A DNA stretch of 64,000 nt, from positions 1 to 64,000 of the forward strand of contig NIVC01002166.1 in the NCBI GenBank assembly GCA_002269645.1. Direction: 5' to 3'. The notes beneath the pieces are model-generated. The model saw only the letters and a program-made list of their open reading frames with translations. It was not told the DNA's origin and made no database searches. Shown here piece after piece: positions 15,257 through 21,200 of this stretch; the first letter of the stretch is position 1, and each line of letters starts with the position of its first letter. The DNA comes from Macrostomum lignano. Taxonomy: Eukaryota. The position numbers and the translations under genes are program-made.

Positions 15257-18200
15257 CTAGACAGCCAGTCCATTGACATCCGCCTGCACTTCCGGCGGCG
15301 GCGCGGGCCAGTACTTCCTCCGGCTGAGAGAGCTGTCTCTCCTCTTGCCCAGATCTCTGATGCTGTCGTAGAAGTTTGACAGGTGCGCCGGGGGACCGGC
15401 CGCCGCTACGAAGAGGCCGCCGCCGCTGTCTGCGGGAGAATCTGTCTGATCCTTCCCGGTGCGGCCTTCGGCACGGCAGCGTCGCCAGAGCAAGTAGGAG
15501 ACACCGACAACGAGCAGCAGGAAGACAATGGCCGCTGCCACCCCGATGCCGATGTACAGGCCTGAGTCAGTGCCGCCTGCGGCTGGTGAACCTGAGGAGT
15601 GGGTTGGCGTGCTGGTGAACCTGAGGAGTGGGTTGGCGTGCTGGTGAACCTGAGGAGTGGGTTGGCGTGCTGGCTGAGGAGTGGGTTGGCGTGCTGGCTG
15701 AGGAGTGGGTAGGCGTGTTGGCTGAGGAGTGGGTTGGCGTGCTGGTGAACCTGAGGAGTGGGTTGGCGTGCTGGTGAACCTGAGGAGTGGGTTGGCGTGC
15801 TGGTGAACCTGAGGAGTGGGTTGGTGTGTTGGCTGAGGAGTGGGTTGGCGTGCTGGTGAACCTGAGGAGTGGGTTGGCGTGCTGGTGAACCTGAGGAGTG
15901 GGTTGGCGTGCTGGTGAACCTGAGGAGTGGGTTGGTGTGCTGGTGGACCTGAGGAGTGGGTTGGCGTGCTGGCTGAGGAGTGGGTTGGCGTGCTGGTGAA
16001 CCTGAGGAGTGGGTTGGTGTGCTGGTGGACCTGAGGAGTGGGTTGGCGTGCTGGCTGAGGAGTGGGTTGGCGTGCTGGCTGAGGAGTGGGTTGGCGTGCT
16101 GGCTGAGGAGTGGGTTGGCGTGCTGGCTGAGGAGTAGGTTGGCGTGCTGGCTGAGGAGTGGGTTGGCGTGCTGGCTGAGGAGTAGGTTGGCGTGCTGGCT
16201 GAGGAGTGGGTTGGCGTGCTGGCTGAGGAGTGGGTTGGCGTGCTGGCTGAGGAGTGGGTTGGCGTGCTGGCTGAGGAGTGGGTTGGCGTGCTGGCTGAGG
16301 AGTGGGTTGGCGTGCTGGCTGAGGAGTGGGTTGGTGTGCTGGTGAACCTGAGGAGTGGGTTGGCGTGCTGGCTGAGGATTGGGTTGGCGTGCTGGCTGAG
16401 GATTGGGTTGGCGTGCTGGTGAACCTGAGGAGTGGGTTGGCGTGCTGGTGAACCTGAGGAGTGGGTTGGCGTGCTGGTGAACCTGAGGAGTGGGTTGGTG
16501 TGCTGGTGGACCTGAGGAGTGGGTTGGCGTGCTGGCTGAGGAGTGGGTTGGCGTGCTGGCTGAGGAGTGGGTTGGCGTGCTGGCTGAGGAGTGGGTTGGT
16601 GTGCCGATGAACCTGAGGATTTAGATGTGTCCAGATTTTGTGAAAAACATTTGGGCTGTGTCTCACTGCTAAATGAGCTTACTCATCATAGTGGCAGCAG
16701 TTGTGCTTGACGATTGCAAGGTGCTGCTTATCCTGACATTAAGTGATGTGCTAAAATCTACTGGGTTGCTGCTTGTCGTCTGGCCACTGACGTCTGATAC
16801 TGCTGTTGCTGCTGCTGCTGTTGTGGCTGTTGTTGTAGCAGTTGCTGTAGCTAGTGTCGTGACAGGGCTGCTGCTTGTATCTGAAAAGTTTTGGATCAGA
16901 ATTACGACAAAAATCTGATAAGTAAACCAAGAAACTTCTTAATTAAAACCTTACTACGCACCTACCACACTCCGCATAAAATGATAACTTCTAGTGGTCC
17001 TTGCATGCACCGCACTCCACATACACCCCACTCCGCACACACCCCACTCCGCACACACCCACTCCGCATACACCCCACTCCGCATTCACCCCACTCCGCA
17101 TACACCTCACTCCGCATACACCTCACTCCGCATACACCCCACTCCGCATACACCCCACTCCGCATACACCTCACTCCGCATACACCTCACTCCGCATACA
17201 CCCCACTCCGCATACACCTCACTCCGCATACACCTCACTCCGCATTCACCCCACTCCGCATTCACCCCACTCCGCATACACCCCACTCAACATTCACCCC
17301 ACTCCGCATTCACCCCACTCTTCGCACAGTGACAGCAGAAAAAGCCGCCCTTACCGGCGAAGGCCGGCTGATTTGTAACGGAGCCGCCGGCGCCCGGCAG
17401 AAGACAGTCAGGCGGCCGAAAGCCACTGCTGCAGAAGCACTGTAGACTCTGCGTCCAGTTACCCCGTCCATTGCAGTTTGGCAGTCCGACGCTACCGGTG
17501 ATGTTGCTCCGGATGCTGGCCAACGAGGTGCAGCGAGAGTTCACGCACATCTGGGCAAATTTTAGCAAGAAAAAGAACGAAACATTCTGCTTATCGCGAA
17601 TTCTCAGACTTCAAAAAATACAAAAATCAAAATTGGATGTGAACTTAGAGCCAGAATGGAGCCTGAAGCATTGGGTCCCGGTTCCTCTACGCAAATTCCT
17701 TCATTTGGAGCTTCAAATGCTTCAATGACGAGATGACCATGATAAACACTCTTTTCATATGTTTGTATGAAGAATAGGAGCGGTAGTAATGTTGTGTTAT
17801 GCCCCCATTATGTTGTAAATAGCGTCAAGAGGGATTTGTATCACACATTTTAGACAGACGATTTCTACCTCGGCGAAGTAGACGTTAACCCGACGTTTTG
17901 AGACGGAGGACTGCCTTCTTGACGAAAGAACACTGAAATAAGTCCTCAAGACATTTGAGACTTTGATATGCAGAAAACCAGAGCTCTAAGCGTTCCCCAT
18001 TCTTCAGTAACTCCTAAAGTGCATGCCATGAATCATTCTCATGTGACTAACGTCAAGTTTTAGTACGTTTCATAAATGGCCGTATACTAGAGGGTCATGA
18101 AAAAGCACCATGAAAACATATTAAACTCATTAGTGCCCACTGCCCACCCCAGAAGACGAACGCAGCAAGCTCAAGAGCAGCAAATGGCGCAGGAACAGCG

Positions 18201-21200
18201 AGGAGGACAGGGAAGGCTGCCATGCACTCCCCCCCGTATATTTCAGACCGATTACGAGAAAATATTAAAGCATTATTGACAACAGTTAGAACGGATCAAA
18301 GCAGGATTAAAAGAGTGACAGGATACGAAAAAAATTTTTTTTTTCAATTGCAATGCGACAGCGAGGCCAAAGAGCCAACCGCGGGGTATAAAACCCCCCG
18401 CCACGCAACCCCCCCCCCCAACACCGGGGGTGGGGGAAAGCCGCGGGGGAGGGGCAGGGGTGGGCAGCGTACACAAACGCCAGTTAGCGCAGCCCGCGCA
18501 AACTAGCCATTAGTGCCCACTGCCCACCCAGAAGACGAACGCAGCAAGCTCAAGAGCAGCAAATGGCGCAGGAACAGCGAGGAGGACAGGGAAGGCTGCC
18601 ATGCACTCCCCCCAACACCAAAAGCAGCAAGAAAACAGACTAGAGCAAAAGCAGACCAAGCAGAGGCAAGCAAAAGCGGACAAGCAAACAAAAAAGGAGC
18701 CCAAAACCTTTCTTCCAAAAAACCGCGAAACACGTCAGGTTTGGTCAAGCGCCGCAACAGCAAGCTTGCGCGCCGCACGCAGAGCCGTGTCATCGCGGGA
18801 CAGGTAGACGCTCACTGCGTCGCTGCGCCAGTCACCCACGCACTGGATCTCCCGCACTGACAGGCCGCACCGGGCCGCCCAGGTGGCGGCGCCTCGCCGC
18901 AGGCTATGCACAGAAAACCCGGCCGCCGGCACTCCCGCCTTGCCGAGCCACGACCTGAACTGTACATCGAGCCTCCGGGACGTCAGAGATGCGTGACCGG
19001 ACGATCCACTGCTGAATGAAAACAGGCCCTGCTGCCGCTGCTTCAGCCGGTTGCAGCGCAGGTGGCCTCGCAGTGCCGCCACTGGACAGAGCGGGTGGCC
19101 CGAAGTCAACTCTGGCAGCAGCACGCGATGCGTCCGACCGTACTGGTTGGTCTTCCCGAAGCTGGACGTCAGAAGCAGGCCTTCGGGGCATCTTGCCAGC
19201 GAGCTCAGTCGCAGCACTGGCGGATCGGCGCGCCAATTGCAATGCGACAGCGAGGCCAAAGAGCCAACCGCGGGGTATAAAACCCCCCGCCACGCAACCC
19301 CCCCCCCCAACACCGGGGGTGGGGAAAGCCGCGGGGGAGGGGCAGGGGTGGGCAGCGTACACAAACGCCAGTTAGCGCAGCCCGCGCAAACTAGCCAAAA
19401 TAACACATGCAGGAAAGTTTCTGATCACATGAAACCCCCATTAATCCCATAGAGATCCCCAAATGCTAAAGTGGTCGGGTTTTCGGCATTACTGGAGCTA
19501 TTTGGCTCCAAATGAAGGGATTGGGGTAGAGAAATTGGGACCCAATGATTCAGGCTCCATTTTGATTCTTAGGTTCACATCCCCAAAGGCGTTGCGCCCA
19601 CAGCCGGACTAATACGAAAGGGCATCATCCCACAACGACCCTTGACTCTCTAATCGCCAGGCGTGTACATTCTCTGTTCTTTGGGGGTTGGCCTTCATGG
19701 CTGTGATCCGCACGACAGCCACCCCCGGCCAATTTTCGCACACAAGCCCCAAATTGAAACATTAACACACCCCACTCCGCATACATCCCACTCCTCACAC
19801 ACCCCACTCCGCATACATCCCACTCCTCACACACCCCACTCCGCATACATCCTACTCCGCACACACCCCACTCCGTACACACCCCACTCCGCATACATCC
19901 CACTCCGCACACACCCCACTCCGCATACACCCCACTCCGCATACACCCCACTCCGCATACACCCCACTCCGCATACACCCCACTCCGCACACACCCCACT
20001 CCGCATACATCCCACTCCGCACACACCCCACTCCGCATACACCCCACTCCGCATGCACCCCACTCCGCATACACTCCACTCCGCATACACCCCACTCCGC
20101 ATACACCCCACTCCGCACACACCCCACTCTGCATACACCCCACTCCGCATACACCCCACTCCGCACACACCCCACTCCGCATACATCCCACTCCGCATAC
20201 ACCCCACTCCGCATACACCCCACTCCGCATGCACCCCACTCCGCATACACTCCACTCCGCATACACCCCACTCCGCATACACCCCACTCCGCACACACCC
20301 CACTCCGCATACACCCCACTCCGCATACACCGCACTCCGCACACACCCCACTCCGCATACACCCACTCCGCATACACCCCACTCCGCATACACCGCACTC
20401 CGCACAAACCCCGGTAGCGTTTTCCTCTGAGCCGCTCTGCTGCCTTCCCCTACCCTCTCTCACCATTCCGGCGCCGCATTCGGCTCCGTCGGGCGTCATG
20501 CCGGGATCCCTATAGCCCGTCGGCCGCAGGTCCAGCCGAGCGAAGGCTGCGTCCAGGCCGCCTCCACCAGAAGTGACCATCACAAGCCGAGCGTCCGCCG
20601 GCGCCATGGACTTCCACCGGGGCATCGGGAACGGCTCAGACATGATCCCTATGCAATAAAGCGTGCCGCATCTCCGGTTCCTGTTTGGTTTGAGTGGCAT
20701 TCTAGTGAAAACTCGATCAGTCCTTTGCGTTCAATTTCATGAAAGCTTCGGCAAAAACTTACTCAAACGAGCAGGACTCGTGTGCGTACCCGACCAGGTT
20801 GTAGGCGGTGGCCCTGTAGTTGCAGTAGCCGTTCTCTGTGTTGCTCGGATCGGCAGTCAGATTAGAAAAGGAATCGGGCGCGCTGCGATAGTTTGTGCCG
20901 TTGAACATCGCGTGGCAGCGGCTGTCGCGCGTGGTGCAGGCGCCGGAGTAGCAGTAGGCCAGGGCCTCCTACCATGCACAGTTGGGTATAGATTCCAGTT
21001 TCAACCATCGCAGCCTCACTCCGCACCCGCAACACTTTGCACCAACCTCACTCCACACCCAACTCACTCTGAATCCTCCTCAATCCGCACCCACCTCACT
21101 CTGCGTCCACGCCATTCCTCACCCACCCCACTCTGCGCCAACCCCACTCTGCAACAACTTCACTCCGCACACACTCCACTCCGCACTAAACCCACTTCGC

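What the first reader, a model, noticed from the sequence alone, without database searches (positions are those of the whole stretch)
18128..19397. Miniature Ngaro/PAT-type retroelement with all cis ends intact and a 2-bp recombination core
Seen: in only 1.27 kb, A1-(half YR)-B1-A2-spacer-B2 with near-identical repeat pairs. The internal B1/A2 junction reads cactaa-TG-gctag, and the outer ends read ttattt-TG-gctag and cactaa-TG-agttt, so the empty site is ttattt-TG-agttt with no longer TSD. A1 is fused at CAATTG directly to mid-YR. A2 is followed by an A-run and contains a GGGG-TATAAAA-CCCC hairpin. Established: Ngaro/PAT elements have split direct repeats, make a circular intermediate, and integrate by tyrosine recombination without TSDs. 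Inference: a recently mobilised non-autonomous derivative. Such mini-YR retroelements are rarely described.
Basis: partly seen in the sequence, partly recalled or inferred. Interest (0 to 1): 0.7.

Follow-up and report, generated by a model that had tools for sequence, protein, structure and literature searches.

The report
Internally deleted Ngaro-type retrotransposon copy
This is a young 1.27-kb remnant of a tyrosine-recombinase (Ngaro-type) retrotransposon that has lost its gag, reverse-transcriptase and half of its recombinase gene but kept its characteristic split repeats; it is a normal kind of mobile-element debris, and whether it can still be moved by a complete partner cannot be told from this window.

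Summary
On the minus strand, 18128-19397 reads TG-A1-(C-terminal half of a tyrosine recombinase, YR)-3'UTR-B1|A2-spacer-B2. A1/A2 (about 164 nt) and B1/B2 (about 107 nt) differ only by one homopolymer indel each.

The YR remnant is 70% identical to the YR of a gag-RT/RNaseH-YR element in a public read assembly. Seven full-length relatives from another assembly share the same A1-[ORFs]-B1A2-spacer-B2 layout, spacer included. So this is an Ngaro-type element, not a local duplication.

About 3.2 kb is missing: gag, RT/RH and the YR N-terminus with its first catalytic Arg.

The "2-bp TG core" is only partly right. Across eight insertions the left flank resembles the conserved B terminus CTAATG at 28 of 48 positions, so TG is the tail of a degenerate target motif.

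"All cis ends intact" is uncertain. A1 may lack a terminal A/T run.

"Recently mobilised non-autonomous derivative" could not be tested. The window holds one copy and the source genome is in none of the searchable collections.

A side finding: the B|A junction lies in a hairpin that covaries across families and is favoured on the sense strand.

Verdict: a real but ordinary new member of a known kind; interest is modest.

The parts
19396..19397 (-). TG dinucleotide just before A1. It is identical to the last 2 nt of B1 and B2, and is either flank or element.
19398..19403 (-). Left flank (target side), ...TTATTT in element orientation. Together with the TG it resembles the B terminus CTAATG at 3 of 6 positions.
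   Evidence: across 8 insertions, 28 of 48 left-flank positions match the B end
19234..19395 (-). A1, the 5' split direct repeat. It starts GCTAGTTTGCG and ends CAATTG.
   Evidence: 99.4% identical to A2, one C-run indel
18738..19233 (-). C-terminal remnant (about 165 codons) of the tyrosine recombinase gene. It is an open frame that keeps K (FGKTNQ), HSLRRG, GDW and Y. It lacks the N-terminal part, including the first catalytic Arg. The deletion junction is at 19233|19234.
18735..18737 (-). YR stop codon
18614..18734 (-). 3' untranslated stretch between the YR stop codon and B1
18508..18613 (-). B1, the internal copy of repeat B. It ends CACTAATG.
   Evidence: 99.1% identical to B2, one G-run indel
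18458..18529 (-). Imperfect hairpin (inverted repeat) spanning the B1|A2 junction. The junction lies in its 5' arm. It is conserved with covariation in relatives.
   Evidence: (I5)
18345..18507 (-). A2, the internal copy of repeat A
18235..18344 (-). Spacer between A2 and B2: A10T7 followed by AT-rich unique sequence. Relatives have an equivalent spacer of 45-92 nt. The first 17 nt may really belong to A.
18128..18234 (-). B2, the 3' terminal copy of repeat B. It ends CACTAATG at the right flank agttta.

Best explanation
This is a young, defective copy of an Ngaro-type tyrosine-recombinase retrotransposon. It lies in sense orientation inside an intron of an ADAM/reprolysin-type gene.

Inferred history:
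- A complete relative of about 4.5 kb would have the layout A1-gag-RT/RNaseH-YR-B1A2-spacer-B2.
- It would be copied through RNA.
- It would be inserted by its recombinase. The recombinase exchanges strands between the element's B|A junction (...CACTAATG|GCTAG...) and a genomic site that loosely resembles the B terminus (here ...ATTTTG|). This leaves no target-site duplication.

Shown in this copy: about 3.2 kb is missing, from the 3' end of A1 to codon ~92 of the YR. So it encodes no gag, no RT/RH and no active recombinase.

I think it most likely that the deletion is a one-off event. It could have arisen by template switching during the reverse transcription that made this copy, or soon after insertion. 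I think it less likely that this is the founding structure of an amplifying non-autonomous family. That choice is inferred, not shown.
For: Repeat layout: A1/A2 and B1/B2 are near-identical, in the order A1-x-B1A2-spacer-B2.

Protein homology:
- The YR remnant hits P0001 at E = 2e-66 and 70% identity.
- P0001 lies on L001 behind gag (SAP domain) and RVT_1 + RT_RNaseH.
- L001's ends overlap by 30 nt, so the B end runs back into A.
- The remnant aligns only with residues 92-249 of P0001 and lacks the GMxRxSSLL arginine.

Same layout in relatives: L013, L014, L017, L018, L019, L020 and L024 all have this layout with a 45-92-nt spacer.

Junction features:
- The B terminus CTAATG is conserved in all of them.
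- Left flanks resemble it at 28 of 48 positions (p about 1e-6 at a 25% background, 8e-4 at 35%), whereas right flanks do not resemble the A start (13 of 48).
- A conserved hairpin spans the junction.

Age: there are no substitutions in about 270 nt of repeat pairs, and the half-ORF is uninterrupted.

For a one-off deletion:
- Only one copy lies in 64 kb.
- The 5' leader next to A1, and possibly the last 17 nt of A1, are gone. In all seven relatives A ends in a T-run.
Against: - The copy number in the source genome is unknown, so a one-off deletion is a prior judgement and not a result.
- The 5' breakpoint coincides with the end of A1/A2 similarity. That would be an odd coincidence for a random deletion if A naturally ends at CAATTG.
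- Every feature known to recur in relatives is retained: the A start, the B1|A2 junction with its hairpin, the spacer and B2. That is what a mobilisable derivative would keep.
- Multi-copy deletion variants of Ngaro elements exist (Cafeteria type 2b, PMC8547959).
- A relative lacking RT/RH turned up in a metagenome (L003).
- No full-length partner from the same genome was seen. The nearest is only 70% identical at protein level.
Confidence: 0.6

Rival explanations
1. This is one copy of a 1.27-kb non-autonomous 'mini-Ngaro' family. The deletion came before this insertion. The mini RNA is reverse-transcribed and integrated in trans by proteins of a complete partner.
For: - It keeps both termini, the B1|A2 junction with its conserved hairpin, the spacer and B2.
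- The repeats have no substitutions and the half-ORF is undecayed, so the copy is young.
- The breakpoint sits exactly at the end of A1/A2 similarity.
- Precedents exist: Cafeteria Ngaro type 2b deletion variants at several loci (PMC8547959), SIRE derived from VIPER (PMC6681497), and an apparently RT/RH-less relative, L003.
Against: - There is no second copy in the window.
- None was found in metagenome, GTDB-genome or IMG/VR scans. These collections probably do not hold the host genome, so this is weak evidence.
- A1 may lack the A/T run that ends A in all relatives.
- The 5' leader, where packaging signals usually lie, is missing.
Confidence: 0.3
2. This is an assembly artefact: a full-length element at this locus was collapsed or mis-joined, giving a false A1-to-mid-YR junction.
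For: The element family is repetitive and G/C-homopolymer-rich. The only A1/A2 and B1/B2 differences are homopolymer lengths, which are typical sequencing errors.
Against: There is no repeat at the CAATTG|GCGCGCC junction that could cause a collapse. The rest of the structure is colinear with relatives.
Confidence: 0.03
3. This is a local tandem duplication, or an LTR or Crypton-type element, unrelated to Ngaro termini.
For: Direct repeats alone could come from duplication.
Against: - The order A-x-B-A-y-B is interleaved and is not produced by a simple tandem duplication.
- The same order, a spacer and the same B terminus CTAATG recur in seven full-length gag-RT/RH-YR elements and in L001.
- There is no 4-6-bp TSD.
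- The relatives carry RT, so they are not Cryptons.
Confidence: 0.02

Closest known systems
Ngaro retrotransposons (order DIRS; Goodwin & Poulter 2004, as summarised in PMC9210276, PMC4157794, PMC8547959)
   Same: - Split direct repeats with A1 at the 5' end and B1-A2-B2 downstream of the YR.
- The YR has K, HxxR and Y.
- Relatives have the order gag, RT/RH, YR and no methyltransferase domain.
- Insertion leaves no target-site duplication.
   Different: - This copy lacks gag, RT/RH and the N-terminal third of the YR.
- A unique spacer of 45-110 nt separates A2 from B2 in this clade, whereas the papers write B1A2B2 as contiguous.
- Placement by RT/YR phylogeny was not tested.
Cafeteria burkhardae Ngaro type 2b (PMC8547959)
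   Same: Ngaro copies with a kilobase-scale internal/5' deletion that keep the split repeats. They are found at several host loci.
   Different: Type 2b loses only ORF1 (about 2 kb) and keeps RT/RH and YR. Here about 3.2 kb is lost, including all enzymatic capacity, and only one copy is known.
SIRE, the short derivative of VIPER in Trypanosoma cruzi (PMC6681497)
   Same: A short, non-coding or barely coding derivative of a YR retroelement, built from its terminal repeats.
   Different: SIRE corresponds to the A2+B2 region only and is highly repeated. The window element keeps A1, half a YR and B1 as well, and its copy number is unknown.
DIRS1-like elements (PMC3266345, PMC7192593)
   Same: A YR retroelement whose circle junction shares a short sequence with the target. 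In DIRS1-like elements this is a 3-bp NTT, most often ATT. It flanks the element on both sides and leaves no TSD. An internal sequence is needed to rebuild the ends.
   Different: DIRS1-like elements have inverted terminal repeats plus an internal complementary region and a methyltransferase domain. Here the repeats are direct and split.
PAT-like elements (PMC4157794)
   Same: Split direct repeats of the A1-B1-A2-B2 kind.
   Different: PAT elements belong to the DIRS group with a methyltransferase domain. The relatives' pol proteins here show only RT and RNase H within 590-661 aa.

Membership tests
Ngaro (YR retrotransposon) | Split direct repeats: A1 at the 5' end; B1, A2 and B2 downstream of the YR, with A1 = A2 and B1 = B2 | tested here: met
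   A1/A2 99.4% identical, B1/B2 99.1% identical, B1 abuts A2, all downstream of the YR remnant
Ngaro (YR retrotransposon) | Encodes a tyrosine recombinase instead of a DDE integrase | tested here: met
   The remnant is homologous to the YRs of gag-RT/RH-YR elements. It gives a weak Pfam Phage_integrase hit (6e-5, below the curated cut-off). K, HxxR, W and Y are aligned. The gene is truncated and lacks the first Arg.
Ngaro (YR retrotransposon) | gag and RT/RNase H genes upstream of the YR | tested here: not met
   They are absent from this copy and from the whole window. They are present in relatives L001, L013, L014, L017-L020 and L024. This copy is therefore a deletion derivative, not an autonomous member.
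Ngaro (YR retrotransposon) | No methyltransferase domain, which separates Ngaro from DIRS1-like and PAT-like elements | tested here: inconclusive
   This cannot be read from this copy. The relatives' pol proteins are 589-661 aa with only RVT_1 and RT_RNaseH hits. No dedicated MT profile was run.
Ngaro (YR retrotransposon) | RT and YR cluster with reference Ngaro sequences in phylogenies | not tested
   No reference Ngaro, PAT or DIRS1 protein sequences were at hand in the tools.
DIRS1-like | Inverted terminal repeats plus an internal complementary region | tested here: not met
   The terminal repeats are direct. The only inverted repeat is the short hairpin across the B|A junction.
Non-autonomous, trans-mobilised family (SIRE-like or LARD/TRIM-like) | Several copies at different loci sharing the same internal deletion junction | not testable with these tools
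   There is one copy in the window. The source genome is absent from the protein collection, since searches gave no self hits. It is also absent from the DNA collections scanned.
LTR retrotransposon / solo LTR | Two identical LTRs bounded by TG..CA, with a 4-6-bp TSD | tested here: not met
   There are two different repeat pairs, interleaved, and no TSD beyond the ambiguous TG.

The most novel reading that the evidence does not exclude
The 1.27-kb unit is a true non-autonomous 'mini-Ngaro' that is copied and integrated in trans. On this reading the minimal cis set is the A start, the spacer-B2 end, and the B1|A2 junction with its conserved sense-strand hairpin. That hairpin would serve as the recombination or end-regeneration signal of Ngaro-type elements, whose replication has never been dissected.
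Probability: 0.25. Interest if true: 0.55.

Novelty: new member of a known kind. Interest (0 to 1): 0.3.

Why it matters
YR retrotransposons are the least understood retroelement order, and only DIRS-1 has been followed experimentally (PMC7192593). A naturally minimised copy delimits which sequences might suffice in cis.

Comparing it with relatives gave two usable leads:
- Targets resemble the conserved B terminus CTAATG.
- A covarying hairpin spans the B|A junction on the sense strand.

As a single defective copy in an intron it is otherwise ordinary genome debris. It matters for annotation: it is not a gene, and the 223-aa ORF is a fusion of repeat A with a recombinase fragment.

Tried and rejected
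- **Other copies in the window:** blastn of the element and tblastn of the relative's gag, pol and YR found none.
- **Copies elsewhere:**
  - The YR-profile scan of JGI metagenomes gave only 31-39% relatives.
  - The B|A junction pattern gave five hits in GTDB genomes. None shares anything beyond the pattern, so they are chance matches.
  - The same pattern gave none in IMG/VR.
- **Host identification:**
  - The GPCR ORF had no homologue at E <= 1e-10.
  - Rfam and tRNA scans were empty.
  - The accession numbers of the related assemblies appear in no paper.
  - The host is only known to carry ADAM-type, rhodopsin-GPCR and mucolipin genes, so it is probably a metazoan.
- **Spacer as evidence that A1 is truncated:** I first thought the A2-B2 spacer showed this, because papers write B1A2B2. 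I rejected it as proof once seven full-length relatives showed a spacer too. A smaller doubt remains over the 17-nt A10T7 run.
- **Short YR proteins as mini-elements:** I suspected P0063 and P0042 marked mini-elements in the related assembly. L024, which carries P0063, is a normal full-length copy with a frameshifted YR. L026, which carries P0042, showed no split direct repeats.
the A repeat folds no better than shuffles.
- **A strict 7-bp core site at the junction:** this reading (arms GCACTAA / TTTGCGC) is good in L001 but weak in the window, so I do not rely on it.
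Full report
**1. What is there**

In element orientation (minus strand):

| Part | Window coordinates | Notes |
|---|---|---|
| Left flank | ends at 19398 | ...gtgttattt |
| TG | 19397-19396 | shared dinucleotide |
| A1 | 19395-19234 | ends CAATTG |
| YR remnant | 19233-18738 | open reading frame; stop at 18737-18735 |
| 3'UTR | 18734-18614 | 121 nt |
| B1 | 18613-18508 | ends CACTAATG |
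| A2 | 18507-18345 | |
| Spacer | 18344-18235 | about 110 nt; starts A10T7 |
| B2 | 18234-18128 | ends CACTAATG |
| Right flank | starts at 18127 | agtttaatatg... |

A1 and A2 differ by one base in a C-run. B1 and B2 differ by one base in a G-run. There is no substitution in about 270 nt. Nothing else in the 64-kb window resembles A, B or the reading frame.

**2. What the coding piece is**

- The frame gives only a weak Pfam Phage_integrase hit (6e-5, below the curated cut-off).
- A database search found P0001 at 70% identity (E = 2e-66) and P0002 at 55%.
- P0001 lies on a 4177-nt read-assembly contig, L001. It sits behind a SAP-domain gag-like ORF and a 661-aa ORF with RVT_1 and RT_RNaseH.
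- The two ends of L001 overlap by 30 nt. So the sequence after its YR runs back into its 5' end. This is what a k-mer assembler gives for A1...B1A2.
- The window frame aligns only with residues 92-249 of P0001.
- In the alignment it keeps the lysine of FGKTNQ, HSLRRG, GDW and the tyrosine. It starts just after the conserved GMxRxSSLL motif, which I take to be the first catalytic arginine (my reading, from general knowledge of tyrosine recombinases).
- The copy therefore lacks gag, RT/RH and an active recombinase. By comparison with L001, about 3.2 kb is missing.

**3. Is the repeat layout that of the family?**

A profile search gave 67 YR relatives. Every one whose contig I fetched comes from a single ENA assembly (ERZ25069853). 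I fetched contigs for several of them.

Seven copies are full-length: L013, L014, L017, L018, L019, L020 and L024. They have gag of about 335-356 aa, pol of 589-659 aa and a YR of about 330 aa. All show A1-[gag-pol-YR]-B1A2-spacer-B2, with B1 abutting A2 and a unique 45-92-nt spacer before B2.

This settles two points:
- The structure in the window is that of the element's ends, not a local duplication.
- The spacer is a trait of this clade. The papers I read write the Ngaro layout as A1-[ORFs]-B1A2B2 (PMC8547959, PMC9210276), with internal repeats downstream of the YR and no methyltransferase (PMC4157794).
- The relatives' pol proteins have room only for RT and RNase H. I therefore call the family Ngaro-type rather than PAT-type. 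This is without a phylogeny.

**4. The junctions and the 'TG core'**

- In every relative B ends in CTAATG. The window and L001 have CACTAATG.
- I lined up the internal junction, the left end and the right end for eight insertions.
- The last six flank bases before A1 match the B terminus at 28 of 48 positions. This gives p about 1e-6 against a 25% background and 8e-4 against 35%. The best positions are -2 (T, 7 of 8), -3 (A, 6 of 8) and -5 (T, 6 of 8).
- The first six bases of the right flank do not resemble the start of A (13 of 48).
- The number of identical bases next to A1 ranges from none (L013) to five of six (L020, CTAATT).
It is not a fixed 2-bp core.
- This is the same idea as the 3-bp junction/target identity described for DIRS1-like elements, where NTT is usual and ATT most frequent, and no TSD is made (PMC3266345, PMC7192593).
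- Where the strands are actually cut is inferred, not shown.

**5. A conserved hairpin at the junction (side finding)**

- The repeat finder reported inverted arms at 18458-18477 and 18510-18529 (I5), and the same arms with the same 32-nt spacing in L001 (I3).
- Folded as a single strand, the window junction gives a 72-nt imperfect hairpin with z = -4.7. None of 200 shuffles folds as well.
- L001 and five other families give z from -2.3 to -5.5.
- On an alignment of seven families, RNAalifold predicts 20 pairs, and 11 of them have changes on both sides.
- 86% of cells pair. The shuffled mean is 72%, and 0 of 500 shuffles reach the observed value. Slid partners give 41-50%.
- There are 24 G·T wobbles against 3 A·C. 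The sense strand folds better than the antisense strand in 7 of 7 families.
- This points to a role in the RNA or the plus-strand DNA rather than a plain double-stranded palindrome.
- The junction TAATG| lies in the 5' arm, opposite CATTG/CGTTT.
- With seven sequences, and an alignment that is only reliable near the centre, this is suggestive rather than proven.
- I found no mention of it in the papers read.
- Only about 70 nt around this junction is conserved at DNA level between the window and L001 outside the YR gene.

**6. Was the mini-element mobilised as such?**

- The window has one copy.
- The source genome is not in the protein collection. Neither the YR nor a GPCR from the window found itself there.
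- The metagenome, GTDB-genome and IMG/VR scans found nothing closer than 39% protein identity, or only chance pattern matches.

In favour of mobilisation:
- All recurring non-coding features are retained.
- The copy is young.
- The breakpoint sits exactly where A1/A2 similarity ends.
- Precedents exist: Cafeteria type 2b (PMC8547959), SIRE/VIPER (PMC6681497), and contig L003. In L003 the gag end and pol residues 4-124 are followed directly by a complete YR.

Against mobilisation:
- In all seven full-length relatives A ends in a T-run 8-55 nt before the gag ATG.
- In the window A2 is followed by A10T7 but A1 is not. So A may naturally be 17 nt longer, and A1 may be clipped.
- The 5' leader is gone.

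I put a one-off defective copy at about 0.6 and an amplifying mini-family at about 0.3.

**7.

The G-run/TATAAAA/C-run motif exists in both A copies. It reads TATAAAA on the strand antisense to the element. The A repeat folds no better than shuffled sequence (z = -0.35). I attach no function to it.

**8. Surroundings**

- The element lies between exons of a reprolysin/ADAM-type gene on the same (minus) strand.
- Supporting ORFs are [12 protein letters not shown] at 22944-23135 (Reprolysin, 4.8e-12) and a further reprolysin piece at 24146-24355. There is also an EGF-like piece at 17287-17568 (EGF_Teneurin, 4.9e-4, below the curated cut-off).
- By eye, there is also a disintegrin-like start at 22636-22830.
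- So the element is an intronic insertion in sense orientation.
- The introns, and the window as a whole, are packed with minisatellites.

**9. Verdict**

- The interpretation as an internally deleted Ngaro-type element is sound.
- The 'TG core' and 'all ends intact' claims need qualifying.
- 'Recently mobilised non-autonomous derivative' remains open.
- It is a new member of a known kind and of modest interest. The target-motif and hairpin observations are the parts most worth following up.

Noticed in passing
window 18458-18529; L001 4129-4147 joined to 1-41; L013 about 9533-9608; L014 about 9302-9391; L017, L018 and L024 junctions: The B|A junction of this clade lies in the 5' arm of an imperfect hairpin. 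The hairpin covaries across seven families. It has many G·T wobbles and few A·C pairs, so it appears to be selected on the sense strand.
   Followed up: partly
L013, L014, L017-L020, L024 and window 19398-19403: Left flanks of eight independent insertions resemble the conserved B terminus CTAATG (28 of 48 positions). Right flanks show no resemblance to the start of A.
   Followed up: yes
L003 1-1429 (JGI metagenome 3300040801): A relative in which the end of gag and pol residues 4-124 are followed directly by a complete YR. This is apparently a derivative lacking RT/RNase H. The contig is too short to show the repeats.
   Followed up: partly
window 17287-24909, minus strand: Exons of a reprolysin/ADAM-type gene: an HExxHxxGxxH metalloprotease motif, disintegrin-like, Cys-rich and EGF-like pieces. 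The introns are filled with minisatellites. The element sits in one intron in the same orientation.
   Followed up: partly
window 17003-17320 and 19767-20412: Two arrays of the same 16-nt unit (GCATACACCCCACTCC) in the same orientation lie on either side of the element-bearing segment. They read as long false ORFs in several frames.
   Followed up: no
window 17635-17718 and 19500-19582: An inverted repeat of about 85 nt (84% identical) brackets the element. About 410 nt lies on one side and 100 nt on the other. It may be an older foldback or TIR element into which the Ngaro copy inserted.
   Followed up: no
whole window: Unusually dense minisatellites: Tandem Repeats Finder returned 42 rows at score 200 or more (some describe the same array at different periods), with units of 4-221 nt spread over the 64 kb. 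These include a TTAGGG-containing 36-mer array at 58386-59280 and an AACCCC-like array at 57294-57681.
   Followed up: no
window 1703-2950 (-), 36859-37827 (+), 59281-61647 (-), 61866-62726 (-): Host genes: a rhodopsin-family 7TM receptor ORF with no homologue at E <= 1e-10 in the protein collection, and two ankyrin-repeat ORFs. There is also a large mucolipin exon; its best PDB matches are mammalian TRPML3 and TRPML1 (E about 1e-29).
   Followed up: partly
ENA assembly ERZ25069853 (loci L013-L026): One assembly holds every YR relative whose contig was fetched, probably dozens of distinct Ngaro-type YR clusters. Many are full-length copies with 99-100% identical repeats. It would be a good data set for studying this clade.
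   Followed up: partly
L013, L014, L017-L020, L024: first bases after A2: The spacer between A2 and B2 begins with a C-rich (CCCACCC)n-like motif in all seven full-length relatives. The window spacer begins instead with A10T7.
   Followed up: no
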